Assembly (NCBI RefSeq): GCF_039654945.1
Contig: NW_027361794.1
Coordinates: 19,840,001 to 19,904,000 of the forward strand
Direction of reading: 5' to 3'
Length of the DNA stretch: 64,000 nucleotides
Source of the DNA: Dendrobates tinctorius
Taxonomy: Eukaryota
In this document: piece after piece, positions 1 through 62,402 of the stretch
How the letters are laid out: each line of letters starts with the position of its first letter
How positions within the stretch are numbered: the stretch's first letter is position 1
Translations under genes and position numbers: made by a program
The notes under the pieces: generated by a model
Seen by the model: the letters and a program-made list of their open reading frames with translations, nothing else
The model's database searches: none
What the model was told of the DNA's origin: nothing

Positions 1-1249
1 CTTTTAAACATGCCACAATCACGCCTATCCTTAAAAAGCCAACCCTCGACCCAACCGCTATGTCCAGCTATCGCCCAATATCACTGCTCCCATTCGCTTC
101 CAAACTCCTGGAGCTGCACGTCCACGCTGAACATTCCTCCCTCATCTCATCTAACTTGCTCTTTGACAATCTACAATCTGGTTTCTGCCCCATCACTACA
201 CTGAGACTGCCCTGACCAAAATTACTAATGACCTACTTACAGCCAAAGCAAATGGACAATACTCTATACTCCTGCTTCTAGACCTCTGCATTTGACACAG
301 TTGACCACTGCCTCCTACTACAGATCCTCTCCTCCTTTGGCATCAAAGACTTCACCCTATCCTGGATCTCCTTATACCTTTCAAACCGCACATTCAGCGT
401 CTCCCACTCCCACCTCCTCATCCCACCCTCTCTCTGTTGGAATCCCCCAAGGCTGTGTTCTAGGACCCCTACTCTTCTCAATTTATACCCTTGGCCCGGG
501 TCAACTCAAAGTCCCATGGATTTCAGTACCACCTTTATGCTGATGACACTCAGATCTACCTCTCTGGCCCAGACATCACCTCTCTGCTGCAAAGAATCCC
601 GGAGTGTCTATCAGGCATATCCTCCTTCTTCTCTCGCTTCAAGCTCAATGTGGACAAATCTGAACTCATCATCTTTCCTCCATCTCACAGATCTTCCTTA
701 CCTGACCTATCACAATTAATTACATCATGCTTTCCCCAGTACCGGAAGTCCGCTGCCTTGGAGTAACCCTTGACTCTGCCGTGTCCTTCGAACCGCACAT
801 CCAAGCTCTTTCTACCTCCTGTCGCCTCCAGCTCAAAAATATTTCCAGAATCCGTCCTTTCCTCAACCCTCAATCTACTAAAATGCTTGTGCACGCCCTC
901 TTCATCTCCTGCCTCGACTAGTGCAACATCCTTTTCTGTGGTCTCCTTGCACCACATTTGGATCCTTCAGATGGAACCTGAAAACCCACCACTTCAAGAA
1001 AGCCTACAGCCTGCAATGACCCCGCTGCCTCCTCACCACTACCGGAGATATCGCCTCAATCAAAACCAGAACTGCTGCAACCCACCAACCTACTGTCTCC
1101 TTCCCCACCATCCTGTAGCATGTATGCCCAAAAGGGCAGGGTCCTCTCCCCTCTGTATCAGTCTGTCATGGTAAGTTTGTTTACTGTAAGTGATATCTGT
1201 AATTTGTATGTAACCCCTTCTTATGTACAGTACCATGGAATCAATGGTG

Positions 1250-1255
<6 letters not shown>
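1..1255 (+). mobile_element. L2-clade LINE, degenerate 3' part (RT remnants plus 3' tail)
   Basis: Frameshifted RT motifs: AFDTVDH-like, [38 protein letters not shown]. Ends in the L2-type 3' stem-loop agtaccat-ggaatca-atggtgct. The 5' part runs off the window. Confidence 0.85.

Positions 1256-1298
<43 letters not shown>
1250..1298. repeat. (TA)n microsatellite
   Basis: Pure TA run directly after the L2 tail. Confidence 0.97.
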
Positions 1299-1302
<4 letters not shown>

Positions 1303-4113: not shown

Positions 4114-5751
4114 CAGTCATATGTTAAAGTTTGGGCACCCCTATTAATATTATCCTTTTTTCTTTATAATAATTTTGGTTTTTGCAACAGCTATTTCAGT
4201 TTCATATATCTAATTACTGATGGACTCAGTTATATTTCTGGATTCAAATGAGGTTTATTGTACTAACAGAAAATGTGCAATCTGCATTTAAACAAAATTT
4301 AACTGGTGCAAAAGTATGGGCACCTCAACATAAAAGTGACATTAATATTTTGTAGATCCTCCTTTTGCAAAAATAACAGCCTCTAGTCGCTTCCTGTAGC
4401 TATTAATGAGTTCCTGGATGAAGGTATTTGTGACCATTTCTGTTTACAAAACAATTCCAGTTCAGTTAAGTTTGATGGTCGCCGAGCATGGACAGCCCGC
4501 TTCAAATTATCCCACAGATGTTCAATGATATTCAGGTCTGGGGACTGGGATGGCCATTCCAGAACATTGTAATTGTTCCTCTGCATGAATGCCTGAGTAG
4601 ATTTGGAGCAGTGTTTTGGATCATTGTCTTGCTGAAATATCCATCCCCTGAGTAACTTCAACTTCGTCACTGATTCTTGCACATTATTGTCAAGAATCTG
4701 CTGATACTGAGTTGAATCCATGCGACCCTCAACTTTAACAAGATTCCCGGTGTCGGCATTGGCCACACAGCCCCAAAGCATGATGGAACCTCCACCAAAT
4801 TTTACTGTGGGTAGCAAATGTTTTTCTTGGAATGCTGTGTTTTTTAGCCTCCATGCATAACGTCTTTTTGTATGACCAAACAACTCAATCTTTGTTTCAT
4901 CAGTCCACAGGACCTTCTTCCAAAATGTAACTGGCTTGTGCAAATGTGCTTTTGCAGACCTCAGGCGACTCTGTTTGTGGCGTGCTTGCAGAAATGGCTT
5001 CTTTCGCATCACTCTCCCATACAGCGTCTCCTTGTGCAAAGTGCGCTGTATTGTTGACCGATGCACAGTGACACCATCTGCAGCAAGATGATGCTGCCGG
5101 TCTTTGGAGGTGGTCTGTGGATTGTCCTTGACTGTTCTCACCATTCTTCTTCTCTGCCTTTCTGATATTTTTCTTGGCCTGCCACTTCTGGGCTTAACAA
5201 GAACTGTACCTGTGTTCTTCCATTTCCTTACTATGTTCCTCACAGTGGAAACTGACAGGTTAAATCTCTGAGACAACTTTTTGTATCCTTCCCCTGAAAA
5301 GCTATGTTGAATAATCTTTGTTTGCAGATCATTTGAGAGTTGTTTTGAGGAGCCCATGATGCCACTCTTCATAGGAGAATCAAATAGGAGAACTACTTGC
5401 AAGTGGCCACCTTAAATACCTTTTCTCATGATTTGATACACCTGGCTATGAAGTTCAAAGCTCAATGAGGTTACAAAGCCAATTTAGTGCTTCAGGAAGT
5501 CAGTAAAAAGTAGTTAGGAGTGTTCAAATCAATAAAATGATACGGGTGCCCATACTTTTGGACCAGTCAAATTTTGTTTAAATGCAGATTTCACATTTTC
5601 TGTTAGTACAATAAACCTCATTTGAATCCAGAAATATAACTGAGTCCATCAGTAGATATATGAAACTGAAATAGCTGTTGCAAAAAACAAAATTGTTATA
5701 AAGAAAAAAGGTTAACATTAATAGGGGTGCCCAAACTTTAACATATGACTG
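4114..5751 (-). mobile_element. Full-length Tc1/mariner element, DD34E, long IR/DR-type TIRs
   Basis: ~210-bp TIRs (cagtcatatgttaaagtttgggcaccc ... gggtgcccaaactttaacatatgactg), each with an inner direct repeat. TA TSD at 4112-4113 and 5752-5753. Confidence 0.96.
4383..5402 (-). CDS. Tc1 transposase (DD34E), nearly intact, with a C-terminal frameshift
   Basis: Paired-like HTH, GRPRK, WTDETK, QQDNDPKH...SPDLNIIE (34 residues between D and E). The native tail (QELINSYRKRLEAVIFAKGGSTKY) is in another frame. Likely true start is MGSSKQLS. Confidence 0.9.
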   Translation of the reverse strand: MQVVLLFDSPMKSGIMGSSKQLSNDLQTKIIQHSFSGEGYKKLSQRFNLSVSTVRNIVRKWKNTGTVLVKPRSGRPRKISERQRRRMVRTVKDNPQTTSKDRQHHLAADGVTVHRSTIQRTLHKETLYGRVMRKKPFLQARHKQSRLRSAKAHLHKPVTFWKKVLWTDETKIELFGHTKRRYAWRLKNTAFQEKHLLPTVKFGGGSIMLWGCVANADTGNLVKVEGRMDSTQYQQILDNNVQESVTKLKLLRGWIFQQDNDPKHCSKSTQAFMQRNNYNVLEWPSQSPDLNIIEHLWDNLKRAVHARRPSNLTELELFCKQKWSQIPSSRNSLIATGSD

Positions 5752-6468
5752 TATATACGAGCTCTGTATATAGTGTCAGTGTTCAGGTAATACAGTGATC
5801 ACTGGTTACTTTATACACAGGAGCTCTGCATATAGTGTCATGGTACAGGTAATACAGTGATCACCAGTGATATATATATATAGGAGCTCTGTATATAGTG
5901 TCAGTGTACAGATAATACAGTGATCACCAGTGACAATATACACAGGAACTCTGTACTCAGTCTATAGTGTATAGTGTGCGTGTACAAGTAATACACTGAC
6001 TCACCGGTGACGTCTCTAGTTGAAGTCCTTCTTCTTTGCTTTTCTCCTTCAGTCAGCACAGACTACCATCACTTTTTCCAGCCAGGACTCATCTTTGCAA
6101 AAAAAAAAAACACACAGTCATCAATAGCTGATCGCTTCCAGAGCACTTTCCCCACTTTTTTCCTGACTTCTACACTACGCCAGATGAAGAAAAAAAAAAA
6201 AAAAAGACAGTGCCGCTCTGCACAGTAACAGGACCCTAAAGAAATTATGTTCCCCACTTGTCACCATAAACTAATATAGCATGTTCCTCATTCTGGCCCC
6301 CAAACAGTAATTAAGTCCCTCATCCTGGCCCCCTTTATTTAATAATCTACCCAGCCTGGCCCCCTTTATTTTATAATATGCCCCAGCCTGGCCCCCTATG
6401 TCCCTTGTGCAGCCTGGTGCCCAGATATCCATACTGGCCCCCATATGTCCCTTGTCCTGCCCCACCCC

Positions 6469-7672
6469 TGTAGTGCTAATATATAAATGGCTATTTTGAG
6501 TCCATATTGAAATATATAGAATGTATTCTTTATATTACATAGCTGCATTTCTAGTTAGACATTAACAGCTACAGACCGGGACAATGCTCATCTTAAGAAC
6601 TATTGTTTATTACCTGAAACCATTTCACGTCACAAACAGTTCTGTTTATCTATATTTGTTGTTTGTCATTGTAAAACATTAAGGTTTATTTAACCTCTCT
6701 CTGTGTTGGTTTTATCTATATCCATGTGACTTTTATATTGTAACGGTTTATGACCCATTGTCTGATGATGCCATGTTGTCTGTTTAATCCAATCTTGAAA
6801 GCCGGCCACTGGAAGGGTTGGGTGAAGCAAGTTAAGGGCCTGTCACACTAAGCGATATCGCTAGCAATATCGCTATAACGTCACTGGTTTTTGTGACGTA
6901 GCAGCGATAATGCTAGCGATATCGCTATGCCTGATACTTACTTCCGACCGGCTCCCCTGCTGGTTATAGCTGGTCGCGCGAGAGCGTCCTGGGCCTGTTT
7001 CTCGTCGGCCACTTCCTACTGAGGCTTCCTGTGGCGCCGACGAGCGACGCGTGGATGCGGGCGGGAGGACGTTAGGATCGCCGCGTCTGACAGGTTAGTA
7101 ATGATCCCCGTCCCCAGCGATGTCGCTGGTGAGATCTGCCTGTGTGGCAGCTCACTAGCGACCACTTAGCGATGCACCAGCGATCCTGACCGCGTCATAT
7201 CGCTGGTGCATCGCTAAGTGTGACAGTACCTTTACACATAAGTGTAATTTAGTATATAAGGCCAGAGAAACATGACTAAGACAGAAGCAAAAACTGGATA
7301 CCTGTATGTGTACAGTGTGGATACCTGCATAAGCGGGGACGCCCGTGCAGTGTTGTGAATCTTCCAGGGGTCTCTGTCTTGGTGTTGCTTCTCTGATATT
7401 CCAGACGGATGATGTTTAAAAACCTCTCGGTGATGATGTGAGTACACTGTATATAGTTAATCTTTATATATATACCTAATCATTATATGTATTCAATCTT
7501 TATCTGTACTCAACCTTTGTATCTTAAAATATACAAAAATGTACACAATCTATACTATCTAATCATACCATTCCTTTAATTTTGTACCTTGAAATAAAAT
7601 TGCGTTATATCGCAAGCAGTAGCCTTCTTTAAAGCCATATCCGAGCCTTAGTGTTAAAAACTTGGCAATACA
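6469..7672 (+). mobile_element. Solo LTR-like element, AT-rich, with a nested MITE
   Basis: TGTAGTGC...GCAATACA termini, TSD cacccc (6463-6468 / 7673-7678), AATAAA near 7593. Both ends are homologous to the element at 40897-42110. Confidence 0.75.
6835..7231. mobile_element. PIF/Harbinger-type MITE (~400 bp)
   Basis: TIR agggcctgtcacactaagcg / cgctaagtgtgacagtacct, 3-bp TTA TSD, internal agcgat-atcgct palindromes. Confidence 0.85.
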
Positions 7673-7678
7673 CACCCC

Positions 7679-8925
7679 ATATATCCATCCTGGTCCATTG
7701 TCCTGGCCTCCTCCATAAATCCATGCTGGCTCCCCCCATATATCTATCCTGGTCCCACTTATATATGCATCCTGGTTCCCCCCAATATATCCATCCTGGT
7801 CCCACATATACATATATATGCACCCTGGCTCCACCATATATATATGCATCCTGGACCCCCATGTATGCATTCTGCTTGCCCCCTTATATCCATCCTGGTC
7901 CTTTTTTACTGCCCCCCATATATCCATCCTGCTGCCCCCTTATATCCATCCTGGTCCTTTTTCCTGCCCCCCCCCCCATATATCCATCCTGCCGGCCCCC
8001 TTATATCCATCCTGGTCCTTTTTTCCTGCCCCCCATATATCCATCCTGCCGCCCCCTTTATATCCATCCTGGTCCTTTTTTCCTGCCCCCCATATATCCA
8101 TCCTGCTGCCCCCTTTATATCCATCCTGATCATTTTTTCCTGCCCCCCATATATCCATCCTGCCGCCCCCTTATATCCATCCCGATCATTTTTTCCTGCC
8201 CCCCATATATCCATCCTGCTGCCCCCTTATATCCATCCTGGTCCTTTTTCCTGCCCCCCCCCCCATATATCCATCCTGCCGGCCCCCTTATATCCATCCT
8301 GGCCCTTTTTTCCTGCCCCCCATATATCCATCCTGCCGCCCCCTTTATATCCATCCTGGTCCTTTTTTCCTGCCCCCCATATATCCATCCTGCCGCCCCC
8401 TTATATCCATCCCGATCATTTTTTCCTGCCCCCATATATCCATCCTGCTGCCCCCTTATATCCATCCTGGTCCTTTTTCCTGCCCCCCATATATCCATCC
8501 TGCCGCCCCCTTATATCCATCCTGGTCCTTTTTTCTTGCCCACCATATATCCATCCTGTCATCCTGCCACCCCCCTTATATCCATCCTGGTCCTTTTTTC
8601 CTTCCCCCTATATATCCATCCAGCCGCCCCCTTATATCCATCCTGGTCCTTTTTTCTTGCCCCCCCCATATATCTGTCCTGGTCCTTATTTGTTTTTACT
8701 GCCCCCCATATATCCATCCTGTTTGCCTCCCTTAAATCCATTCTGCTTCTTTTTCCTGCCCCCCATATATCCATCCTGTCGCCCCCCTTATATCCTCCTG
8801 GGTCCTCTTTCCTGCCCCCATATATCCATCGTGTCATTCCAGTTATATCCATCCTGATCCTTTTTTCCTGCCCCCCTATATATCCATTGTGCCGCCGGCC
8901 TTAAATCCATCCTGGTCCTTTTTTT
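7679..8925. repeat. ~57-bp C-rich minisatellite
   Basis: Unit approximately ccccatatatccatcctgccgcccccttatatccatcctggtccttttttcctgc. Related degenerate units at 6290-6468 lie on the other side of the solo LTR. Confidence 0.95.
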
Positions 8926-9319
8926 CTGACACAGACTTTTTTTTTTTCTTGTTCTCCTTCTCTCCTTTCCTTCCTCTGCCAAGGGCCCACTGGGGGAATC
9001 CCCGGTACCCCGCCAGGCCAGACCGACCCTGAACGGTATCACCGTCATGGGAATGTGGATATCACTGAAACTGTGATGCTAGGAAGGAGAGGGTGACCAA
9101 TACCAAACCCCACGAGCCCTCTCAATTCATAGGCATAATAGTGATCGAGTGGGCTACCGCTATGGATGATACACTCTGCCTAACCAACTATCGTATGGTA
9201 AATATCTCATAGATCCTGGGGTCATTAGTATCTGCACCAAGAATGAGGCTGAGTATTTAATTAACTGTTGGTGGTCAGAGGTAGTCAGTGAAGTGGATGG
9301 TATCATATTGCACATGTAG

Positions 9320-10070
9320 GGGGCAGTACTGTTGGGACATTATACTGTGTGTGTGTGGGAACAAAATACTGTGTGGAGGGATGGTGGTACTGTGAGATTA
9401 TACTATGTGTAGGGGTATGGCGATACTGTGGAAATATCTTTTGTGTGAGAGATGCCAGTACTGTGGAAGCTTAATACTGTGTGAGGGACAACATATATAC
9501 TGCATAAGGGGTGTAAAATGGTGTGTCATAAGAAGAACGAATTCTCAGGGCTGTGCTTGTGCGACATTTATACAAAAACACTGTGTGGGGGCATCATATA
9601 TACTGCATAAGGGGCATAATGGGGGCATTACACTGTGTGGGGGCATCATATATACTGAATAAGGGGCATAATGGGGGCATTACACTGTGTGGGGACATCA
9701 TATATACTGCATAAGGGGCATTATGGGGGCATTATACTGTGTGGGGGGCATCATATATACTGCATAAGGGGCATAATGGGGGCATTACACTGTGTGGGGG
9801 CATCATATATACTGCATAAGGGGCATTATGGGGGCATTATACTGTGTGGGGGTATCATATATACTGCATAAGGAGCGTAATGGGGGCATTACACTGTGTG
9901 GGGGCATCATATATACTGTATAAGGGGCATAATGGGGGCATTACACTGTGTGGGGGGCATCATATATACTGCATAAGGGGCATAATGGGGGCATTACACT
10001 GTGTGGGGGCATCATATATACTGCATAAGGGGCATAATGGGGGCATTACACTGTGTGGGGCCAAGAAAGG
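9320..10070. repeat. ~50-bp minisatellite
   Basis: Unit approximately cattacactgtgtgggggcatcatatatactgcataaggggcataatgggg. It is a reverse-complement relative of the 24.1-27.2 kb array. Confidence 0.9.
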
Positions 10071-13000
10071 GGCCCCATTATTCTCTATGTGGAGTGCGGC
10101 TCTGCGGGTGGAGGTCAGTGCTGGAGGCTCCATTTTTCTCTATGTGGAGTGCGGCTCTGCGGGTGGAGGTAAGTGCTGGAGGCTCCATTATTCTCTATGT
10201 GGAGTGCGGCTCTGCGGGTGGAGGTCGGTGCTGAAGGCTCCATTATTCTCTATGTGGAGTGCGGCTCTGCGGGTGGAGGTCGGTGCCGGAGGCTCCATTA
10301 TTCTCTATATGTAGTGCGGCTCTGCGGGTGGAGGTAAGTGCTGGAGGCTCCATTATTCTCTATGTGGAGTGCGGCTCTGCGGGTGGAGGTCGGTGCTGGA
10401 GGCTCCATTATTCTCTATGTGGAGTGCGGCTCTGCGGGTGGATGTCGGTGCTGGAGGCTCCATTATTCTCTAACTCCTCCCGCACTCCACATAGAGAAAA
10501 ATGGAGCCTCCAGCACCGACCTCCACCCGCAGAGCCGCACTCCACATAGAGAATAATGGAGCCTCCAGCACCGACCTCCTCCCGCAGAGCCGCACTCCAC
10601 ATAGAGAATAATGGAGCCTCCAGCACCGACCTCCACCCGCAGAGCCGCACTCCACATAGAGAATAATGGAGCCTCCAGCACCGACCTCCTCCCGCAGAGC
10701 CACACTCCACATAGAGAATAATGGAGCCTCCGGCACCTAACTCCTCCCGCACTCCACATAGAGAATAATGGAGCCTCCAGCACCGACCTCCTCCCGCAGA
10801 GCCGCACTCCACATAGAGAATAATGGAGCCTCCAGCACTTACCTCCACCCGCAGAGCCGCACTACATATAGAGAATAATGGAGCCTCCGGCACCGACCTC
10901 CACCCGCAGAGCCGCACTCCACATAGAGAATAATGGAGCCTTCAGCACCGACCTCCACCCGCAGAGCCGCACTCCACATAGAGAATAATGGAGCCTCCAG
11001 CACTTACCTCCACCCGCAGAGCCGCACTCCACATAGAGAATAATGGAGCCTCCAGCACCGACCTCCTCCCGCAGAGCCGCACTCCACATAGAGAATAATG
11101 GAGCCTCCAGCACTTACCTCCACCCGCAGAGCCGCACTACATATAGAGAATAATGGAGCCTCCGGCACCGACCTCCACCCGCAGAGCCGCACTCCACATA
11201 GAGAATAATGGAGCCTTCAGCACCGACCTCCACCCGCAGAGCCGCACTCCACATAGAGAATAATGGAGCCTCCAGCACTTACCTCCACCCGCAGAGCCGC
11301 ACTCCACATAGAGAATAATGGAGCCTCCAGCACCGACCTCCTCCCGCAGAGCCGCACTCCACATAGAGAATAATGGAGCCTCCAGCACTTACCTCCACCC
11401 GCAGAGCCGCACTACATATAGAGAATAATGGAGCCTCCGGCACCGACCTCCACCCGCAGAGCCGCACTCCACATAGAGAATAATGGAGCCTTCAGCACCG
11501 ACCTCCACCCGCAGAGCCGCACTCCACATAGAGAATAATGGAGCCTCCAGCACCGACCTCCACCCGCAGAGCCGCACTCCACATAGAGAATAATGGAGCC
11601 TCCAGCACCGACCTCCACCCGCAGAGCCGCACTCCACATAGAGAATAATGGAGCCTCCAGCACCGACCTCCACCCGCAGAGCCGCACTCCACATAGAGAA
11701 TAATGGAGCCTCCAGCACCGACCTCCACCCGCAGAGCCACACTCCACAGAGAATAATGGAGCCTCCAGCACCAACCTCCACCCGCAGAGCCGCACTTCAC
11801 ATAGAGAATAATGGGGCCTCCAGCACCGACCTCCACCCGCAGAGCCACACTCCACATAGAGAATAATGGAGCCTCCAGCACCAACCTCCACCCGCAGAGC
11901 CGCACTCCACAGAGAATAATGGAGCCTCCAGCACCTACCTCCACTCGCAGAGCCGCACTCCACATAGAGAATAATTATGGAGCCTCCAGCACCGACCTCC
12001 ACCCGCAGAGCCGCACTCCACATAGAGAATAATGGAGCCTCCAGCACCGACCTCCACCCGCAGAGCCACACTCCACATAGAGAATGGAGCCTCCAGCACC
12101 GACCTCCACCCGCAGAGCCGCACTCCACATAGAGAATAATGGGGCCTCCAGCACCGACCTCCACCCGCAGAGCCACACTCCACATAGAGAATAATGGAGC
12201 CTCCAGCACCGACCTCCACCCGCAGAGCCACACTCCACATAGAGAATGGAGCCTCCAGCACCGACCTCCACAGAGAATAATGGAGCCTCCAGCACCGACC
12301 TCCACCCGCAGTGCCGCACTCCACATAGAGAATAATGGAGCCGCCAGCACCGACCTCCACCCGCAGAGCCGCACTCCACATAGAGAATAATGGGGCCTCC
12401 AGCACCGACCTCCACCCGCAGAGCCACACTCCACATAGAGAATAATGGAGCCTCCAGCACCGACCTCCACAGAGAATAATGGAGCCTCCAGCACCTACCT
12501 CCACCCGCAGAGCCGCACTCCTCATAGAGAATAATGGAGCCTCCGGCACCTACCTCCACCCGCAGAGCCGAACTCCACATAGAGAATAAAGGAGCCTCCA
12601 GCACCGACCTCCACCTGCAGAGCCACACTCCACATAGAGAATAATGGAGACTCCGGCACCGACCTCCACCCGCAGAGCCGCACTCTACATAGAGAATAAT
12701 GGAGCCTCCAGCACCGACCTCCACCCGCAGAGCCGCACTCCACATACAGAATAATGGAGCCTCCAGCACCGACCTCCACCCGCAGAGCCACACTCCACAG
12801 AGAATAATGGAGCCTCCAGCACCAACCTCCACCCGCAGAGCCGCACTTCACATAGAGAATAATGGGGCCTCCAGCACCGACCTCCACCCACAGAGCCGCA
12901 CTCCACATAGAGAATAATGGAGCCTCCGGCACCGACCTCCACCCGCAGAGCCACACTCCACAAGAGAATAATGGAGCCTCCGGCACCGACCTCCACCCGT

Positions 13001-14615
13001 AGAGCCGCACTCCACATAGAGAATAATGGAGCCTCCAGCACCGACCTCCACCCGCAGAGCCGCACTCCACAGAGAATAATGGAGCCTCTAGCACCGACCT
13101 CCACATAGAGAATAATGGAGCCTCCAGCACCGACCTCCACCCGCAGAGCCGCACTCCACATAGAGAATAATGGAGCCTCCAGCACCTACCTTCACCCGCA
13201 GAGCTGCACTCCACACATAGAATAATGGAGCCTCCAGCACCGACCTCCACCCGTAGAGCCGCACTCCACATAGAGAATAATGGGGCCTCCAGCACCGACC
13301 TCCACCCGCAGAGACACACTCCACATAGAATAATGGAGCCTCTAGCACCGACCTCCACATAGAGAATAATGGAGCCTCCAGCACCGACCTCCACCCGCAG
13401 AGCCGCACTCCACAGAGAGAATAATGGGGCCTCCAGTACCGACCTCCAACCGCAGAGCCACACTCCACACAGAGAATAATGGAGTCTCCAGCACCGACCT
13501 CCACCCGCAGAGCCGCACTCCACATAGAGAATAATGGGGCCTCCAGCACCGACCTCCACCCGCAGAGACACACTCCACATAGAGAATAATGGAGCCTCCA
13601 GCACCGACCTCCACTCGCAGAGACATACTCCACATAGAGAACAATGGAGCCTCCGGCACCGACCTCCACCCGCAGAGCCGCACTCCACATAGAGAATAAT
13701 GGAGCCTCCAGCACCGACCTCCACCCGCAGAGCCGCACTCCACATAGAGAATAATGGAGCCTCCAGCACCGACCTCCACCCGCAGAGCCGCACTCCACAT
13801 AGAGAATAATGGAGCCTCCAGCACCGACCTCCACCCGCAGAGCCACACTCCACAGAGAATATTGGAGCCTCCAGCACCAACCTCCACCCGCAGAGCCGCA
13901 CTTCACATAGAGAATAATGGGGCCTCCAGCACCGACCTCCACCCGCAGAGCCGCACTCCACATAGAGAATAATGGAGCCTCCAGCACCGACCTCCACCCG
14001 CAGAGCCACACTCCACAGGGAATAATGGAGCCTCCAGCACCAACCTCCACCCGCAGAGCCGCACTTCACATAGAGAATAATGGAGCCTCCAGCACTGACC
14101 TCCACCCGCAGAGCCACACTCCACATAGAGAATAATGGGGCCTGCGGCACCAACCTCCACCCGCAGAGCCGCACTCCACATAGAGAATGGAGCCTCCAGC
14201 ACCGACCTCCACCCGCAGAGCCGCACTCCACATAGAGAATAATGGAGCCTCCAGCACTGACCTCCACCCGCAGAGCCGCACTCCACATAGAGAATAATGG
14301 AGCCTCCAGCACCGACCTCCACCCGCAGAGCCACACTCCACATAGAGAATAATGGAGCCTCCAGCACCGACCTCCACCCGCAGAGCCGCACTCCACATAG
14401 AGAATAATGGAGCCTCCAGCACTTACCTCCACCCGCAGAGCCGCACTTCACATAGAGAATAATGGAGCCTCCAGCACCGACCTCCACCCGCAGAGCCGCA
14501 CTCCACATAGAGAATGGAGCCTCCAGCACCGACCTCCACCCGCAGAGCCGCACTCCACATAGAGAACAATGGAGCCTCCAGCACCGACCTCCACCCGCAG
14601 AGCCACACTCCACAT
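10071..14615. repeat. 55-bp tandem array (~80 copies) with an orientation switch near 10470
   Basis: Unit ccacatagagaataatggagcctccagcaccgacctccacccgcagagccgcact. The first ~7 copies (10071-10470) are on the opposite strand. Confidence 0.97.
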
Positions 14616-14887
14616 ATATGGCTGCTCTGTGTGCACAGGACCTGTGATGAGGTCACAGGAGGGGAGGAGTCAGGGTCACATGATATTCGGAGTGGAGACA
14701 CTCAACTGGTTTCAAGTTAGTCCGCAGTTCGTCTTTAGCTATTAGATTTTCATCTATGGGGCACCAACTGTATATACATTTTATTTTGATCAAGGTTCCC
14801 TGGGCCACTAGTGCTCACAATGAGCAGCTCAATGTCCTGAATAATATTTGCCCCAAAAATGATCAACTCTATGTGTAGCTCAGAAGT
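14580..14887 (-). other. Inverted duplicate of 23243-23953 (putative ZNF promoter/first-exon region), without the MITE
   Basis: Near-identical reverse complement, e.g. gctgctctgtgtgcacaggacctgtgatgaggtcacaggaggggaggagtcag and caaggttccctgggccactagtgctcacaatgagcagctc. Confidence 0.92.
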
Positions 14888-17785
14888 ATATGATTTGCTG
14901 CGGATTAAAGAAGGCGATGAATGGAAGGCAGCCTTTAATACCCTAGAAGGTCATTTTGAGTGTATAGTATTGCCTTTCGGCCTTACAAATGCTCCGGCTT
15001 CTTTCAAAATTTCATTAACGACATTCTGAGGCTGTTGATTGGTAGGACTGTTATCGTTTATTTGGATGATATTTTGATCTATTTGCCCAATCTGGAGTCA
15101 CATTGGCTGAGAGTCTGCGAGGTTTTGCAGATTCTAAAAGAAAACACACTCTTTGCTAAACTGGAGAAATGCGAGTTTGCGGTACAGAAAATTAGTTTTT
15201 TGGGGTACATTGTTTCCAGTGATGGTTTTGAGATGGACCTGGTGAAGGTTCTGGCGATATTGGAGCGGCCTACACCTGAATGCTTGAAGTCAATTCAGAG
15301 ATTCTTGAGGTTTGCTAATTATTATAGAAAATTCATAAAGATTTTTTCTGTTTTTGCAAAACCTCTTACTGATCTTACTTAGAAGGGTTCTAATTCTGTC
15401 CAACGGTCCCCTGAGGCTGTTAAGGCCTTTGAGCATCTCCAGGTGAAGTTAAGCTCTGCTCCTGTGTTGACAGATAGACGAGACTAAGTCCTTTCTGGTA
15501 GAGGTGGATGCCTCATCAGTAGGAGTGGGGCTGTTCTGTCACAGGAGGGAGAGGATGGGGTGCATCCTTGTGCGTTCTTTTCTAAGAAATTTTCAGAGGC
15601 GGAGCTCAACTACGATGTTGGGAACTGAGAATTGCTGGCTAATAAGCTTGCATTTGAGCATTGGCGACATTTTTTGGAGGGCGCTAGAAATCCTATACAA
15701 GTCTTTACTGATCATAAGAATCTGATCTATCTAGATGCTGCTAAACGTTTGAATGCCCGTCAAGCTAGGTGGACATTGTTTTTTGCCCCATTCCATTTCT
15801 CTGTGACATATATCCCTGGGACAAAGAATGTTAAAGCTGATGCTTTGTCTCGAAGTTTCTCCCCAGTGGATAATACTGAAAAGGAGGAATCTATTCTGCA
15901 GAGAGGTGATGGTGGCAGCATTTGGTTCTGAGTTGGAAAATAGCATTCTTAAAGCCCACCAACACTCCGTTTGTGAAATTATTTGTGCCTAAAGGCCTGA
16001 GGAGAGCTTTGTTTACGGAATGTCATGAGTCCCGTTTGCCGGGTCATCCAGGGATTGCCGAAACTAGAAAGTCGATCGGTCGGTCTCGTGGCTAAGAGAA
16101 ATCGTAAGTGGGTACGTCAGTGTACTGTGTGCGCGAGGTCTAAGGCTTCTCATGCTCTGGCGTCAGGGTTGCTTTGCCCATTAGAAGTTCCTAGTTCTCC
16201 ATGGATGCATCTTGCAATGGATTTTATCACTGACCTGCCGGTCTCTGAGGGTTTTTCTGTCATCTGGGTTGTAGTGGACCGATTTAGTAAGATGTGTCAT
16301 CTGGTCCCGTTCAATAAATTACTCTGCGCTAAGACACTTGCCAGGGCATTTGTGGAAAAGATTGTCAGACTCCATGGTGTTCCCACGGACATTGTCTCCG
16401 ATAGGTTGCCACAGTTTGTGGCTCGCTTTTGGCATGCCTATAATGACAGACTTAAGGTTCATTTGTCATTTTCGCCGAGTTATCATCCAGAGTCCAATGG
16501 ACAGACCGAGAGGAAGAACCAGGACGTTGAGCAGTTTTTGAGATGTTTTGTAGCAGACAATCAGGAGATGTGGTCGGAATATCTACAATTAGCTGAGTTT
16601 GCTCTCAATAATGATACGTCTTCTTCGGCTGGGTGTTCTCCTTTTTTTGTTGTACTGGGAGGCCTCCATCTTTCGGTCCTTTTTCTAAGATTGGGGCAGC
16701 GGTGTCTGAGCAGGAGAGTTTTTCTGGAAATTTGGAAAGGATTTGGACCAGTGTGTGCCATAATCTGAAACAGGCTAATAGGAGGTCTAAAAAATATTTT
16801 GACAAGAGAAGAAGGGAGGCGAGGTTTGTTGTTGGGGACATGGTTTGGTTGTCCTCTAGGAATCTGCATTTACAGATCCCTTCTAAAAAGTTGAGGCCTA
16901 AGTTTGTAGGACCCTTCAAAATGGTTCAGATTGTCAACTCAGCAGCGGTGAGATTAGACATTCCTTCGTCTTAGAAAATTAATTCAGTTTTTCATGTATC
17001 TTTCACGAGAAAGTTGACAAGCCAGATAAGGTGGCTATGCCTTCTGCTCCTCCAATTGATGAGGACTGCGAGTTCAAGATTTCACGCATTCTTGATTCCA
17101 GGTGGCACAGATGAGGCTTACAGTATCTCATGTCCTGGAAGGGTTTCGGTCCCAAGGACGTTTCCTGGGTGAAAGCTGGGGACGTCTCAGCCGCAAAGTT
17201 AATTAAAGCTTTTCACAGGCGATTTCCGAATAAGGCCCGGCCTAGAGGATCCGGGGGATCCTCGTTAAAGGGGAGGTACTGTTAGAATCTGTTTTGCTTG
17301 ACCGTCCGCCATTTTCTTGTGGTGTTCAGGCTGCTGGTCTTTCTCCTCTGATGCTGGGTTTGTCTTGGGTCAGGTGATTGCATCACTCTTTATTAACCTG
17401 CATCTGTCTCCCTATCCTTGCTGCACAACAGTGTTAATCTACTTGAGGTCTGACTTGGTGCTTTGCTTTGCCTTCTGTGTTTGTAACCTGTGCAATGCTT
17501 CGACTTCTGGTCCTGCTAGCCTTTGTTTCTTTATCCCATTTGTTTCTGCAGCCTTCTGTGTGCTTTCTATTAGGATGTGACCCTTTTTTAAATCCAGTCC
17601 TTAGGTCTTTCAGGGATCCCCCTCCCCCTATCTATAGGTCTTCGCTTGAGATTAACTTAGGATCTTCGGGGGGGGTCTATTCGGTAGGAATGGGTCGCCC
17701 ACTCCATCGTAGGGTATCAGTCTAGTTGTAGTGCAGGGTCAGTTTTCCCCCTTCTATCCTAGTCCTGTGCTGCAGAACCGTAACA
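14888..17785 (+). mobile_element. 5'-truncated chromoviral Ty3/Gypsy (RT-RH-IN-chromodomain remnants, PPT, 3' LTR)
   Basis: [53 protein letters not shown] motif, and chromodomain-like ILDSR..LQYLMSWKGFG, with many stops and frameshifts. PPT aaggggagg, then LTR TGTTAG...GTAACA at 17280-17785. Confidence 0.93.
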
Positions 17786-19367: not shown

Positions 19368-20732
19368 TTAATAGCCATAGTGATGTTTGGCATGACAGTT
19401 CCGTTTTGTACATTTTTGATTTTCTTTACATCGTAAGCGTTGTTCGTTTGCGGTAGTGGTATCGAGAATGTAAAGTTGGGCAAATGCGCGTTGCTGGTCA
19501 TCTGAGGGATGTAGTGTTCCAGTTCTATGATAGATCTGGCCATGTATGCGGAAACAGTATGGGCCATATCCAGGAGGTGGTGAAATATTTGCACCCATGG
19601 AGGCAAAAGCAAAGGAACTGTTAATACTTCGTATATTATCCATGAAATTTTTGCTAAATTCACTTTGCCCTTTCAGCAAACGTGTAAAGACATCAGGATA
19701 TTGTAGTATGGGTACATAGACTTTACCCTTCTGACAGCAGAGCGTAAAGTTGTTATCAGAAGGTATCTCTGCTACAAAATGCAAAGCTTCGCAATGCTCA
19801 CATACATGGGTCATGTCACCACAGCTGTGTTCGGTAATACTATTTTCATCATTAGTGAAAATGTGAGGTTGTAGTAGAAGTGCATGTCCAACCGATGGGG
19901 TGCGCCTAGTTTTGAGACCAACGTATATTTGTCTTGGTTGCACTTTCTGCAGGCTAACTGCAGCTTGTATGTGAAGAAACTGTGCGTTGGTATTGACTAA
20001 TGGTGGTATTGATAGGGCAGAAACAGATTGCTGATTAGTTATGTCAGTGAACGGCATATAGGATGAAGTGTGGTAGTAACTTGTTCCACATGCTGATGTG
20101 GAAGCATCCTGTTGTGAGTCTACTAATAATGATGAGGAAGAAGCCGTCTGTTGTTGGCGGTGATGGCGTGTAGAGGCTTCTTCAGCCAATGTAATAGATT
20201 TAGAGTTAGGGGATTTGTGTGTGAGACAACGGCGTTTATAAGCCTTAATCTTGTCAAGTCGATGCTGTTTTTCCTCAGGAGTCTCATTAGCACGGCGTTG
20301 TTTTTGTCGTAGTGCTAAAGCTGCTTTCCTTTCACTGGCATTGGCATACTGTGCATCGGTATTGAATGGTGGTATTGATAGGGCAGAAACAGATTGCTGA
20401 TTAATTATGTCAGTGAACGGCATATGGGATGAAGTGTAGCAGTAAATTGTTCCACATGCTGATGTGGAAGCATCCTGTTGTGAGTCTAATAATAATGATG
20501 AGGAAGAGGCCGTCTGTTGTCGGCGGTGACGGCGTGCAGAGGCTTCTTCAGCCAATCTTATGGATTTAGAGTTAGGGGATTCGTGTGTGAGGCGACGGCG
20601 TTTATAAGCCTTAATCTTCTCAAGGCGATGGTGTTTTTCCTCAGGAGTCTCATTAGCACGGCGTTGTTTTTGTCGTAGTGCTAAAGCTGCTTTCCTTTCA
20701 CTGGCATTGGCATACTTTTTGTTATGACTCAT
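19368..20732 (-). CDS. Helitron RepHel N-terminal fragment (454 aa; Rep catalytic and helicase domains absent)
   Basis: RRANETPEE (STPR-like) repeats, CEHC..CCQKGKV, NIRSINSSFAFASMG, FRIHGQIYHRTGTL, FAQLYILD. A shifted frame continues with RRYNNPTVSEVAVVF to ~19285. Confidence 0.88.
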   Translation of the reverse strand: MSHNKKYANASERKAALALRQKQRRANETPEEKHHRLEKIKAYKRRRLTHESPNSKSIRLAEEASARRHRRQQTASSSSLLLDSQQDASTSACGTIYCYTSSHMPFTDIINQQSVSALSIPPFNTDAQYANASERKAALALRQKQRRANETPEEKQHRLDKIKAYKRRCLTHKSPNSKSITLAEEASTRHHRQQQTASSSSLLVDSQQDASTSACGTSYYHTSSYMPFTDITNQQSVSALSIPPLVNTNAQFLHIQAAVSLQKVQPRQIYVGLKTRRTPSVGHALLLQPHIFTNDENSITEHSCGDMTHVCEHCEALHFVAEIPSDNNFTLCCQKGKVYVPILQYPDVFTRLLKGQSEFSKNFMDNIRSINSSFAFASMGANISPPPGYGPYCFRIHGQIYHRTGTLHPSDDQQRAFAQLYILDTTTANEQRLRCKENQKCTKRNCHAKHHYGY

Positions 20733-22722: not shown

Positions 22723-23412
22723 TGCGTGTGTGTGGTGACGTCACCGGTTACAACTGGACGGAAGTTGTTACAACCGGAAGCTGGTTAGGGCATTTATTAT
22801 TATAGATAATTTGATGACATAAAACTTTATTAAGTGTAATTTCACACACAAACTTAGCATCTGTTCCACAACCCTTGAATTAAACATAGATTAGTGGGTT
22901 AAGCCCTTATGGAAACTTCACGTAAGTTGTGATAGCAAACAGTGAGGTACCTATAAAATGTTTCACATGTGGAGTTAGCATATTTTGCATAACTCTTCAA
23001 CTATACATAGGGTTGTGAATTTTTTTGGCAAATTTTGTTTGTTTGAGTACGTTTGATAATGCGCGTGTAGCATTATGTAACACAGAATTTCAAGTTCATA
23101 CAGAATCTGTGACTGATGTCTCACTGGATGTAGTTCACAACATTCTGGCCATGAAGGACATTGTGATGATCGTCCGAGCAAGTGACTGGGGAAACTTCCA
23201 AGTTTTCGTTAACATACATAAAGAAGCGACTCACGGGAATAACTTCTGAACTACACATAGAGTGGATCATTTTTTGGGCAAATATTATTCAGGACATTGA
23301 GCTGCTCATTGTGAGCACTAGTGGCCCAGGGAACCTTGATCCAAATAAAATGTATATACAGTTGGTGCCCCATAGATGAAAATCTAATAGCTAAAGACGA
23401 ACTGCAGACTAA

Positions 23413-23809
23413 AGGCCCCTTTACATTTAGTGATGCACCAGCGATCCCGACCACGATATGACCCGGTCAGGATCGCTGGTGCATCGCTAAATGGTCGCTA
23501 GTGAGCTGCCAAACAGGAAGATCTCACAGCGATGCAGCAGCGACGCAGCAGCGGTCATTACATACCTTTCAGACGCGGCGATGTTGACGTCCTACACCAG
23601 CGTCAACACGTCGCTCGTCAGCGCCAGCAGGAAACGGCCGACGAAAAATGGACCCGGCCGATCTCGCGTGATCAGCGATACCCAGCGGGGGAGCCGGTCA
23701 GAGGTAAGTATCACACATAGCGATATTACTAGCAATATCACTGCTACGTCACAAAATCGGTGATGCTTTAGCGATATTGCTAGCGATATCACTATGTGTA
23801 AAGCCTCCT
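23413..23809. mobile_element. PIF/Harbinger-type MITE
   Basis: TIR aggcccctttaca / tgtaaagcctcct, TAA TSD. The empty site is visible in the paralogue at ~14712-14725. Confidence 0.9.
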
Positions 23810-23839
23810 TAATTTGAAGCCGGTTGAGTGTCTGCACTC

Positions 23840-23947
23840 CGGATATCATGTGACCCCTGACTCCTCCCCTCCTGTGACCTCATCACAGGTCCTGTGCACA
23901 CAGAGCAGCCATATATGTGGAGTGCGGCTCTGTGGGTGGAGGTAGGT
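23840..23947 (+). promoter_or_regulatory. Putative promoter and non-coding first exon of the ZNF gene, ending at splice donor GAG|gtaggt (23941/23942)
   Basis: E-box-like catgtgac, ctcctcccctcc, and a good 5' splice site. The sequence resembles 5' ends I recall from frog ZNF genes. The link to exon 55859 is inferred, not shown. Confidence 0.45.
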
Positions 23948-24657
23948 GCTGGAAATTCCCTGTTACTGAGCGTGGGGGACATTAACCCCTTCAGCACAGA
24001 GACTCTTTTGGTGTTTTTGCTGCCACTTTATAAGAATCATAAGATTTCTGTTCTGCTTCCTGTAAGAGATACATACGACCCAACTATGGAAGACAGGAAG
24101 TGAGGTAATGGATTGTTCTCATAGTACAGGGCCCCTTTCTTGGCCCCACACAGTGTAATGCCCCCACATTAGTGCCATTCCCCCACACACAGTATATTGT
24201 TCTCACAGTACTACCAACTGCCATCCCTCCACACTCAGTATAATGTTCCCATAGTACCACCATCCCCCACACAGTATAATGTTCCCACATTACTGCCATC
24301 CCCAACACATTGCAATGTTCCCACAGTACGGCCATCCCCCCATGCACTGTATAATGTTCCCACAGTACGGCCATCCCCCCACACACAGTATAATGTTCCC
24401 ACAGTACGGCCATCCCCCCACACACAGTATAATGTTCCCACAGTACGGCCATCCCCCCACACGGTATAATGTTCCCACAGTATCGCCATCCCCCCCACAC
24501 GGTATAATGTTCCCACAGTATCGCCATCCCCCCCACACAGTATAATGTTCCCACAATACCACCATCCCCCCCACACAGTATAATGTTCCCACAGTACCAC
24601 CATCCCCCCCACACAGTATAATGTTCCCACAGTACGGCCATCCCCCCACACACAGTA

Positions 24658-55613: not shown

Positions 55614-55925
55614 TAAATGAGACAAGAATTAATGTTATGGAAGATGAGTCTATGAGAAACGTATTCAGCTGCCGACTCCGAGGAAGAAACTGCTTGTTGT
55701 CTGTGGCCTAAATATATAGGTTTTATTAGTAGATGTAAAGAAGGAAACCAAATACTGTAAAATAATAAATCTCCTCATATGTTCCCCTTATTATCTCCAG
55801 CAATTGTATTATTACACAGGATTTTTATGATGTTACATCGGATCATCTTCTCATTCAGGTCTCTACAATATCAGATCCTCTCAGATCTTCTACATAAGAG
55901 AATTTTCCTGAATTACCCATCAAAG

Positions 55926-56003
55926 ATGGATATGGACAGAGACAAGATGGCGGAGAGGATATTACACCTCACCCTAGAGATCCTCTTCCGGCTTACTGGA
56001 GAG
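55926..56003 (+). CDS. KRAB zinc-finger gene (XlCOF/XlCGF-like), coding exon 1 (exon starts at 55859)
   Basis: Acceptor ttctcattcag at 55858, ATG at 55926, MDMDRDKMAERILHLTLEILFRLTGE, donor GAG|gtgaga, phase 0. Confidence 0.9.
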
Positions 56004-56068
56004 GTGAGAGATTCTGATGACGTCACATTACATAGTAGCATAGTTATTAAGGTTGAAGGAAGACTTTA

Positions 56069-61834: not shown

Positions 61835-62014
61835 GATTACACAGTAGTGAAGAAGACCTCTAGTGAGCGCTGTCAGGACCCTGTGTCTGAGGGATGCGGA
61901 AGACCCCTGAGCCCAATCACGGGACCTCCACCTCACCCCCTGATACATGAGGACATCAATGACCAGAAGATCCTAGAACTCGTCTACAAGATGATTGAGC
62001 TGCTGACTGGAGAG
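61835..62014 (+). CDS. KRAB zinc-finger gene, coding exon 2
   Basis: cag|GAT...GAG|gt, 180 nt, DYTVVKKTSSERCQ...KILELVYKMIELLTGE, phase 0/0. Confidence 0.92.
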
Positions 62015-62097
62015 GTGACACTGCTGGGAATGCTGGGACATTATACAGTAATGCTATGAAGGGATCAGGTTGTTGATGGTATCATTGTATGTGTCAG

Positions 62098-62221
62098 GTT
62101 CCTATAAGGTGTCAGGATGTTGCTGTCTATTTCTGCATGGAAGAGTGGGAGTATTTAGAAGGACACAAAGATCTGTACAAGGACGTCATGATGGAGGTTC
62201 CCCAGCCCCTCACATCACCAG
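62098..62221 (+). CDS. KRAB zinc-finger gene, coding exon 3 (KRAB-A-like box)
   Basis: 124 nt, [41 protein letters not shown], phase 0/1, AG/GT boundaries. Confidence 0.93.
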
Positions 62222-62304
62222 GTAATAGACAGGACTAAATACACATGGCCTATAATTATCTGTATGTAAAGAATGAATTCAGTCGCTGTATGTGTTTCCT
62301 CCAG

Positions 62305-62402
62305 ATCTATCCAGTAAGATGACAACACCAGAGAGATGTCCCCGTCCTCTTCTTCAACAGGACTGTAAACAAGAAGATCCCAATGTTCCTCAGGATCATC
62401 AG
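62305..62402 (+). CDS. KRAB zinc-finger gene, coding exon 4 (linker)
   Basis: 98 nt, DLSSKMTTPERCPRPLLQQDCKQEDPNVPQDHQ; the frame stays open across all four exons. Confidence 0.9.

What the first reader, a model, noticed from the sequence alone, without database searches (positions are those of the whole stretch)
10071..14615. A 4.5-kb satellite built from a probable exon end and splice donor
Seen: 38 of the 55 bp of the unit match a single-copy sequence at 23916-23953 (tgtggagtgcggctctgtgggtggag|gtaggtgctgga). The array runs directly into the inverted paralogue of that locus at 14580-14887. Units vary exactly at the donor position: GAG|gtaagt (perfect consensus), gtaggt, gtcggt, gtcagt, gttggt. 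Inference: the first-exon/donor junction of a ZNF paralogue was amplified ~80-fold. This would give a VNTR of alternative 5' splice sites (U1 binding sites). Each unit also carries an ATG on the donor strand, so choice of donor could tune 5'UTR length and uORF load.
Basis: partly seen in the sequence, partly recalled or inferred. Interest (0 to 1): 0.75.

Follow-up and report, generated by a model that had tools for sequence, protein, structure and literature searches.

The report
Splice-donor minisatellite of frog KRAB-ZNF genes
A 4.5-kb run of 83 copies of a 55-base unit is an expanded copy of the "end of first exon plus splice signal" that a whole family of poison-frog KRAB zinc-finger genes shares. 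It is a family-wide, very abundant version of a repeat type already known from single genes such as human F7, and no regulatory role was shown.

Summary
The array is real: 83 units of 55 bp at 10071-14616.

The exon and ZNF reading is largely supported, by homology only.
- Translated units match 23 NCBI gene models from Ranitomeya imitator, R. variabilis and Dendrobates tinctorius. Twenty-one carry a KRAB box, 19 of them also C2H2 fingers.
- Their N-termini are 1-6 units read through, and all end at the unit's GAG|GT, in three different reading frames.
- The next four exons of these models lie in this window on the + strand (55859-62402, KRAB box included). That is 31.9 kb downstream of the one-unit copy at 23914-23953.

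Three corrections:
- The "single-copy parent" is not single-copy. 23845-23969 is a very high-copy repeat, and the 55-bp tandem form occurs in three runs, from at least two organisms.
- About 75% of units carry GTCGGT, a poor donor. The variation at the donor is a CpG site, multiplied by higher-order repeats.
- The expanded copy A points leftward, and no downstream exon for it lies in the window.

No confirmed RNA run was available, so splicing here and any tuning role remain untested. This is a new variant of a known kind (F7 IVS7, amphioxus "mirages"). The scan has an unfollowed note of a possibly similar array on other DNA (s1-382990).

The parts
10071..10472 (+). 7.3 units of the 55-bp repeat with the donor strand on +. 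Inverted duplicate of part of the higher-order-repeat block.
   Evidence: TRF. Best match is 10979-11380 inverted, 98.0% over 402 bp. Seven donor-like sites.
10480..14616 (-). Main array: 75 units with the donor strand on the minus strand. Each unit is about 27 nt of exon end (with an ATG) plus about 28 nt of intron start.
   Evidence: TRF, unit list. 76 donor-like sites: 58 GTCGGT, 6 GTAAGT, 6 GTTGGT, 4 GTAGGT, 2 GTCAGT. 275-bp higher-order repeat in 10834-11548.
14587..14615 (-). First unit of copy A: ATG 14615-14613, exon-like end at 14589, first donor-like GT at 14588-14587 (GTCGGT, weak). The first site with a purine at +3 (GTAAGT) follows exon end 14427, in the third unit.
   Evidence: Read. 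Positions of the purine-at-+3 sites.
14617..14887 (-). Copy A of the shared upstream region (putative promoter and upstream part of exon 1).
   Evidence: Inverted repeat with 23810-23953 (93.8%) and 23242-23412 (97.1%). Abuts a 5'-truncated Gypsy RT fragment from about 14888.
23242..23412 (+). Copy B, distal part of the shared upstream region.
   Evidence: Part of it (bins 23205-23339) has raised word depth of about 2,400-10,500 in X1; 23340-23384 has only 87.
23413..23809 (.). MITE inserted into copy B only, with TAA on both sides. The site is empty in copy A.
   Evidence: Very high depth in all four runs.
23810..23941 (+). Copy B: proximal upstream region and probable first exon. ATG at 23915, exon end at 23941.
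   Evidence: Translation ends ...MWSAALWVE. Matches the N-termini and exon-1 ends of the gene models. The CFAP97-like model P0022 includes a counterpart of about 23838-23913 in its exon 1.
23942..23968 (+). Donor GTAGGT and the rest of the single unit. The last 15 bp have diverged from the array unit.
   Evidence: The 15-bp tail has no significant match to the unit inside the window. The family majority differs from the window at 23954, 23961 and 23962.
55859..56003 (+). Exon 2 of the KRAB-ZNF gene. Acceptor AG at 57-58, main ATG at 55926. The exon-1 ATG frame stops at TAA 55895-55897.
   Evidence: 76-95% identity to the gene models.
61835..62014 (+). Exon 3.
   Evidence: Open 60-codon translation. 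AG and GT flanks. 73-87% identity to the models.
62098..62221 (+). Exon 4, KRAB box.
   Evidence: Pfam PF01352, E 1.8e-10, 40.7 bits against a cut-off of 20.4. 81-95% identity to the models.
62305..62402 (+). Exon 5.
9322..10070 (.). 38/52-bp satellite and the shared junction that follow the array in copy A. The counterpart in copy B is 24129-24657 plus 26221-27194.
   Evidence: 10038-10075 equals the reverse complement of 24129-24166 (100%).

Best explanation
The array is a locally expanded copy of a 55-bp minisatellite. In dendrobatid frogs this repeat forms the 3' end of the first exon and the 5' splice site of a large KRAB zinc-finger gene family, and occasionally of other genes.

Unit structure: each unit holds about 27 nt of exon end, including an ATG, and about 28 nt of intron start.

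The two copies in this window lie head to head.
- Copy B (+ strand, one unit, donor GTAGGT at 23941|23942) is the probable first exon of the KRAB-ZNF gene. Exons 2-5 of that gene lie at 55859-62402.
- Copy A (minus strand) has the same upstream region followed by 76 units plus 7 inverted ones.

Growth (shown as structure, mechanism inferred): the array grew by unequal exchange or replication slippage, seen as 275-bp and other higher-order repeats. There was also one inverted duplication.

Donor use (inferred): most units carry GTCGGT, a crippled donor with C at +3. A transcript started upstream would therefore read through weak units and splice at the first unit with a purine at +3. In copy A that is the third unit, with exon end 14427. 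The remaining units would be intronic decoys.

Reading frames (inferred): 55 is not a multiple of 3, so unit ATGs fall in all three frames. They give either uORFs, as in this window's gene, or apparent N-terminal extensions, as in the annotated models.
For: - Array and arms.
- Translated units hit 2 + 21 gene models. Twenty-one have KRAB and 19 also have C2H2 fingers, from three species.
- The repeat-coded N-termini are 30-119 aa. All stop at the same nucleotide boundary, GGTGGAG|, read in three frames (...RVE|...GWR from AG|G...GGG from G|GN), then continue into one shared exon 2.
- That exon 2 and exons 3-5 are in the window on the + strand with proper AG and GT flanks and open frames. Exon 4 is a KRAB box.
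- No other + strand unit lies between 23953 and 55859.
- Read-through sites in the models: 16 of 16 frame-2 sites code Ser (GTC..), 0 of 20 frame-3 sites code Lys (GTAAGT), and at most 1 of 26 frame-1 sites could be GTAAGT. In this array 8 of 83 sites are GTAAGT.
- The tandem 55-bp form is present and very deep in runs of other organisms.
Against: - No RNA evidence for this genome. All four runs laid were contigs, none is a confirmed RNA run, and no loose end at 23941/23942 was among those shown.
- The gene models may rest on multi-mapped RNA-seq reads or on ab initio extension, so the number of units in exon 1 and the N-terminal peptides may be annotation artefacts.
- Copy A has no exon 2-5 homologue on the minus strand in 1-10070. 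It may be an orphan.
- No C2H2 finger lies in the window. The finger exon must lie beyond 64000.
- The upstream part 23845-23913 is as deep as the unit in run X1 and occurs elsewhere as tandem repeats of about 72, 78 and 96 bp. This fits a free satellite family as well as a gene-linked cassette.
Confidence: 0.68

Rival explanations
1. Free satellite first. The 55-bp repeat and its relatives of about 72-96 bp are an abundant, possibly transposon-borne satellite family of dendrobatid genomes. Copies near genes are occasionally exonised because the unit happens to contain an ATG and a GT. The link to KRAB-ZNF genes is a by-product of tandem gene duplication carrying one such copy along. The array here is a neutral satellite block.
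For: - Summed word depth at 23835-23969 is 3-5 x 10^5 in X1, against 20-90 at 22980-23204. This window's 83 units could explain under 1% of that.
- The same tandem form is seen in X18 and X11, and other tandem periods of the same region occur in X11, X15 and X18.
- Two unrelated genes (CFAP97-like, DCAF4 isoform X2) use the same exon end.
- Copy A has no gene behind it in the window.
- Earlier notes report Tx1 LINEs homing into a 55-bp and an 81/86-bp repeat in this genome. Identity with this repeat was not tested.
Against: - 21 of 23 protein hits are KRAB genes sharing one exon 2.
- Both copies here carry the same ~310-bp non-tandem upstream region (171 + 144 bp aligned).
- No terminal inverted repeats, target-site duplication or coding capacity of a transposon bound the cassette.
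- No Rfam family matches.
Confidence: 0.22
2. The array is a functional VNTR of alternative 5' splice sites and U1 binding sites. Its length and donor choice tune 5'UTR length, uORF load and hence expression of the ZNF gene.
For: - Annotated first exons contain different numbers of units, 1-6.
- Unit ATGs fall in all three frames.
- In this window's gene the exon-1 ATG gives a 21-codon uORF ending 28 nt before the main ATG.
- Ten minus-strand units keep a purine at +3.
Against: - 62 of 83 units have GTCGGT.
- In the best-studied case, F7 IVS7, downstream pseudo-sites stay silent and do not compete (PMC1557585). Amphioxus mirages do not disturb splicing (PMC3087553).
- No transcript, polymorphism or expression data were obtained here.
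- No downstream exon for copy A lies in the window.
Confidence: 0.12
3. The repeat is coding: it adds a real repetitive N-terminal peptide to the KRAB-ZNF proteins.
For: - The donor strand has no stop codon in any frame of the consensus unit, giving ORFs of up to 636 aa.
- NCBI models annotate it as coding sequence.
Against: - The 55-nt period rotates the frame.
- The models join exon 2 in three different frames.
- A conserved ATG (MDMDRDKM...) sits in exon 2.
- In this window's gene the exon-1 ATG frame stops after 12 codons of exon 2.
- In a G+C-rich 55-mer, absence of stops is expected by chance about 7% of the time (own estimate).
Confidence: 0.04

Closest known systems
Human F7 intron 7 37-bp VNTR (splice-donor minisatellite; Borensztajn et al. 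2006, PMC1557585)
   Same: The tandem unit spans an exon/intron boundary, so the authentic donor is followed by a ladder of near-identical donor-like sites.
   Different: F7 is one gene, an internal exon and a few units, and only the most upstream site is used. Here the repeat sits at the first exon of a whole gene family in at least three species. Arrays reach 83 units, and annotated exons read through 1-6 units before splicing. Most units carry a weakened hexamer, and the repeat is very abundant genome-wide.
Amphioxus 'mirages' (tandem duplications of exon-intron boundaries; Adh3, globins; PMC3087553)
   Same: Minisatellite-like duplication of a splice boundary. Shows length instability and concerted evolution within arrays, and has no evident effect on normal splicing.
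   Different: Mirages are gene-specific. This unit is shared by 21 KRAB models plus two other annotated genes and exists in the order of 10^4 unit-equivalents. That figure is a rough reading, not a copy number.
Other splice-donor minisatellites noted in this genome by this scan (LDLRAD2, MRAS, TRIM69, MANSC4, talin)
   Same: Same genome, and the same principle of an amplified exon end plus donor.
   Different: Each of those is private to one gene and, per those notes, only the first site is used. This one is a family-wide, multi-species 5' module.
Transposon- or satellite-derived alternative first exons (chimeric transcripts initiated in repeats)
   Same: A dispersed repeat supplies the transcript start region, an ATG and a splice donor to downstream genes, including unrelated ones (DCAF4 isoform X2, CFAP97-like).
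   Different: No transposon hallmarks were found around the cassette. A transcription start inside it is inferred, not shown.

Membership tests
Splice-donor (F7 IVS7 / mirage type) minisatellite | The repeat unit spans an exon/intron boundary that is used in mRNA | tested here: met
   By homology only. 23 gene models end exon 1 at the unit's GGTGGAG|, in three reading frames, and continue into a shared exon 2. That exon 2 lies in the window behind copy B.
Splice-donor (F7 IVS7 / mirage type) minisatellite | The array starts at the authentic exon end and extends into the intron | tested here: inconclusive
   Copy A: the units begin directly after the shared upstream region. The models place 1-6 units inside exon 1. 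No RNA of this genome was available.
Splice-donor (F7 IVS7 / mirage type) minisatellite | Only the most upstream donor is used (F7 behaviour) | tested here: not met
   All 23 models read through at least one unit. This may be because the skipped units carry GTCGGT. Annotation artefacts are not excluded.
Splice-donor (F7 IVS7 / mirage type) minisatellite | Length polymorphism among alleles (VNTR) | not tested
   No second haplotype or individual was examined. The paralogous copies have 1 and 83 units.
KRAB-C2H2 zinc-finger gene 5' end | KRAB-box exon downstream on the same strand | tested here: met
   For copy B: exon 4 at 62098-62221, PF01352, E 1.8e-10. For copy A: none in 1-10070.
KRAB-C2H2 zinc-finger gene 5' end | C2H2 finger array | tested here: not met
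   No C2H2 pattern or TGEKP linker in any frame of the window. The finger exon would lie beyond 64000. The homologous models have 7 or more fingers (P0003).
Satellite DNA family | Head-to-tail arrays at many loci, with homogenisation and higher-order repeats | tested here: met
   Higher-order repeats of 275 bp and others. Very high word depth and tandem-junction contigs in X1, X11 and X18. The number of loci was not counted.
Internal repeat of a dispersed transposon | Terminal repeats, target-site duplication or transposase/RT belonging to the element that carries the array | tested here: not met
   Nothing of the kind bounds the two copies. The nearby Gypsy, Tc1, MITE and Helitron pieces are separate insertions.

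The most novel reading that the evidence does not exclude
The 55-bp repeat is a selected, family-wide 5' control module of dendrobatid KRAB-ZNF genes. It would be a length-variable ladder of weak and strong 5' splice sites and out-of-frame ATGs that sets how much productive mRNA each fast-evolving paralogue yields. Orphan copies such as copy A could act as portable first exons that capture neighbouring genes, as in DCAF4 isoform X2 and the CFAP97-like gene.
Probability: 0.15. Interest if true: 0.8.

Novelty: new variant of a known kind. Interest (0 to 1): 0.55.

Why it matters
Repeats that copy a splice donor are known as curiosities of single genes, where the extra sites stay silent.

Here one such repeat seems to be the common first exon and donor of a whole, rapidly duplicating KRAB-ZNF family across at least three poison-frog species. 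It is annotated inside first exons in variable numbers and is abundant enough to count as a satellite.

If transcripts confirm this, it offers three things:
- a natural series of arrays (1 to 83 units, weak and strong sites mixed) for testing how 5' splice sites are chosen;
- a case of a satellite and a gene family's 5' end evolving together;
- a warning for annotation, because the repeat-coded N-termini of these models are probably upstream ORFs rather than protein.

Tried and rejected
- Transposon-internal repeat unrelated to genes was my first reading. I dropped it once the unit translations hit KRAB-ZNF gene models and exons 2-5 turned up in the window.
- Rfam on the whole window: no match.
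- C2H2 and linker pattern scan: nothing.
- Tracing the unit's 15-bp tail to copy B's downstream 175 bp or to its upstream region: scores were within the range of shuffles.
- The look-up of encoding contigs for P0001 and P0002: gene spans only (36 kb and 17 kb), no DNA. The donor hexamers used in those genes could not be read.
- The look-up of sequencing runs and read laying: only Logan contigs and no confirmed RNA run, so expression and the 23941->55859 joint are untested.
- The search of earlier findings by sequence: blank.
- The spliced model (exons joined) was not built or searched. Exons were translated and compared one by one by reference, so I could not look up this gene's own annotated protein.
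- The big representative-protein search was not used, because the word search had settled the family.
Full report
**1. The observation**

Tandem Repeats Finder reports a 55-bp unit at 10071-10472 (7.3 copies, 94% matches) and at 10480-14616 (75.3 copies, 85% matches). 10071-10472 is an inverted copy of 10979-11380 (98.0% over 402 bp), and it matches again 275 bp further on.

Splitting the array on the donor strand gives mostly 55-bp units. Shorter variants of 34, 36, 47 and 52-54 bp also occur. A five-unit (275-bp) higher-order repeat is present three times at about 10834-11548.

The array abuts 14577-14887 directly. That stretch is an inverted copy of 23810-23953 (93.8%) plus 23242-23412 (97.1%). 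In copy B the two pieces are separated by a MITE at 23413-23809 flanked by TAA.

23914-23953 matches the unit consensus at 38 of 40 positions. Past the array, 10038-10075 is identical to the reverse complement of 24129-24166, and both copies then run into a 38/52-bp satellite.

The window therefore holds two head-to-head copies of one module: upstream region, unit(s), then satellite. Copy B has one unit. Copy A has 83 units and lacks the 175 bp at 23954-24128.

**2. The donor position**

Of 83 donor-like sites, 62 are GTCGGT, 8 GTAAGT, 6 GTTGGT, 4 GTAGGT and 3 GTCAGT. A slightly stricter pattern gave 61, 8, 6, 4 and 2.

The +3/+4 positions are the most variable in the unit. They account for 24 of 101 differences among 63 full-length units. 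In the consensus they form a CpG. The six CpG positions vary 4.5 times more per site than the others, and GTTGGT and GTCAGT are the two deamination products. Several GTAAGT units are copies of one event carried by the higher-order repeat and its inverted duplicate.

From general knowledge of vertebrate 5' splice sites, +3 is a purine in the great majority of them. About three quarters of the units are therefore poor donors. On the minus strand only ten sites keep a purine at +3. The first follows exon end 14427, in the third unit.

**3. What it is: the link to KRAB-ZNF genes**

My first reading was a transposon-internal satellite. The large ORFs nearby are Gypsy, Tc1 and an STPR protein. No C2H2 finger occurs in any frame of the window, and Rfam finds nothing.

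The picture changed when I searched translations of the array, which has no stop codon in any frame of the consensus unit.
- The 236-aa ORF hit two NCBI gene models: one from Ranitomeya variabilis and a Dendrobates tinctorius 'gastrula zinc finger protein XlCGF53.1-like'. Both have a KRAB box.
- The 636-aa ORF hit 21 more. Nineteen are KRAB plus C2H2 proteins of R. imitator, R. variabilis and D. tinctorius. The other two are a CFAP97-like protein and DCAF4 isoform X2.

In every model the repeat-coded part is N-terminal, or near-N-terminal in the CFAP97-like model, and is 30-119 aa long, equal to 1-6 whole units plus the 27-nt exon end.

It always stops at the same nucleotide boundary, GGTGGAG|, but in three reading frames:
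- ...RVE| followed by VSTISDPLSEDLL;
- ...GWR, with the Arg codon completed by the first base of exon 2, followed by SLQYQIL;
- ...GGG| in DCAF4.

Agreement at the nucleotide level across three frames is hard to explain unless GAG|GT is the annotated exon-1 end.

**4. The gene in this window**

tblastn of the models on the window places their next exons on the + strand:
- Exon 2 at 55859-56003, with acceptor ...cattcag.
- Exon 3 at 61835-62014.
- Exon 4 at 62098-62221.
- Exon 5 at 62305-62402.

Identities are 73-97%, the flanks are AG and GT, and the frames are open. Exon 4 is a KRAB box (PF01352, E 1.8e-10).

Copy B lies on the same strand, 31.9 kb upstream, and is the only + strand unit between 10.5 kb and exon 2. 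The orthologous gene ranges are 17 and 36 kb.

In copy B the ATG at 23915 opens MWSAALWVE up to 23941. Continued into exon 2, that frame stops at TAA 55895-55897 (read). The conserved frame starts at ATG 55926 (MDMDRDKMAERIL...). For this gene, exon 1 would therefore be non-coding and carry a 21-codon uORF.

The finger exon must lie beyond the window.

On the minus strand left of copy A (1-10070) there is no homologue of exons 2-5. Copy A's target gene, if any, is outside the window.

**5. Not single-copy**

No run on record as RNA holds the stretch. Four runs were laid on 22800-24140 as Logan contigs only: X1 (DNA?, organism A), X11 (kind unknown, organism A), and X15 and X18 ('RNA?' guesses, organisms F and G).

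| Stretch | Summed word depth, X1 | Summed word depth, X18 |
|---|---|---|
| 23835-23969 | 3-5 x 10^5 | up to 5.8 x 10^5 |
| 22980-23204 | 20-90 | 0 |
| 23970-24140 | 550-1,650 | 220-720 |

- Loose ends behind 23953 read as the start of the next 55-bp unit, in 25 contigs of X1 and 36 of X18.
- Loose ends before 23914 read as the end of the previous unit, in X1, X11 and X18.
- Joints 23953->23914 carry 13-15 letters in between.
- At 23933 the majority letter in all runs is the array's C, not copy B's T.

Depth from contigs is not a copy number. Even so, this window's 83 units could account for well under 1% of it.

The part upstream of the unit (23845-23913) is equally deep in X1. It also occurs elsewhere as tandem repeats with periods of about 72, 78 and 96 bp (tables 5, 5c and 7).

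So the 55-bp tandem form is abundant in organism A and in at least one other organism. Exon 1 looks assembled from monomers of two related satellites. No loose end at 23941/23942 was among those shown, which says nothing either way, because no laid run is a confirmed RNA run.

**6. How it most likely works**

Shown:
- the structure of the array;
- the homology of the unit's GAG|GT to annotated exon-1 ends;
- the KRAB-ZNF exons behind copy B;
- the abundance of the repeat.

Inferred:
- A promoter lies in the shared upstream region of about 310 bp.
- Transcripts read through GTCGGT units and splice at the first unit with a purine at +3.
- Later units are intronic decoys, as in F7.

A small consistency check supports the read-through idea. 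In the models, all 16 frame-2 read-through sites code Ser (GTC..). None of 20 frame-3 sites codes Lys (GTAAGT). At most 1 of 26 frame-1 sites could be GTAAGT. In this array 8 of 83 sites are GTAAGT. The paralogues are not independent, and frame 2 cannot contain GTA.. without a stop codon, so this is weak support.

Array growth by unequal exchange follows from the higher-order repeats. The inverted end block, and the loss of 175 bp relative to copy B, point to one more complex rearrangement that I cannot resolve.

**7. Comparison with what is known**

The closest kinds are the F7 IVS7 37-bp VNTR and amphioxus 'mirages'. In F7 the first element spans the exon 7 boundary and the downstream pseudo-sites stay silent (PMC1557585). 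Mirages are tandem duplications of exon-intron boundaries that do not disturb splicing (PMC3087553). This scan has already filed several single-gene examples in this genome as ordinary.

This case differs in five ways:
- it sits at the first exon;
- it is shared by 21 KRAB-family paralogue models and two unrelated genes in three species;
- it is annotated inside exons in variable number;
- it is dominated by weakened sites;
- it is abundant enough to be a satellite.

I found no paper describing it, although the searches were limited. An unfollowed first-stage note, s1-382990 ('ZNF-A intron 1', about 48 decoy donors), may be the same repeat on other DNA. A follow-up note on a Tx1 LINE homing into 'a 55-bp repeat unit' (s1-376837) may also concern it. 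Neither could be compared by sequence.

**8. Verdict**

The exon-end plus donor origin and the ZNF link hold by homology. Amplification from this particular locus, use of the sites in this genome, and any tuning function are not shown.

It is a new variant of a known kind, of moderate interest.

Noticed in passing
window 23413-23809: MITE with TAA on both sides, inserted about 100 bp upstream of the probable exon 1 of copy B. The site is empty in copy A (about 14717-14719). It is the deepest repeat in all four runs laid.
   Followed up: partly
window 24658-26220: Tc1/mariner element with an open 340-aa transposase ORF (24862-25884, minus strand). It splits the 38-bp satellite of intron 1. A second open Tc1 transposase ORF lies at 4383-5402 (minus strand).
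   Followed up: partly
window 29124-32615: 1163-aa ORF of a Gypsy-like element with a SCAN-type gag, a protease, and the integrase placed before the reverse transcriptase (Gmr1-like order). It lies inside intron 1 of the ZNF gene.
   Followed up: no
window 23845-23913: The stretch just upstream of the unit is itself very high-copy. In other runs it occurs as tandem repeats with periods of about 72, 78 and 96 bp, so the first exon seems built from monomers of two related satellites.
   Followed up: partly
proteins P0022 and P0023 (D. tinctorius): A CFAP97-like gene and DCAF4 isoform X2 also begin with the repeat unit and splice at the same GAG|. This suggests that stray copies of the cassette act as alternative first exons for unrelated genes.
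   Followed up: partly
window 59601-59693: Telomere-like (CTAACC)n run of about 16 copies inside intron 2 of the KRAB-ZNF gene.
   Followed up: no
window 19368-20732 (minus strand): 454-aa open frame with STPR repeats (PF21107). It lies between the two head-to-head copies, in the region another note calls a Helitron pair.
   Followed up: no
window 14888-16768: 5'-truncated Gypsy fragment (RT tail, then integrase) that starts exactly where the homology between copies A and B ends.
   Followed up: partly
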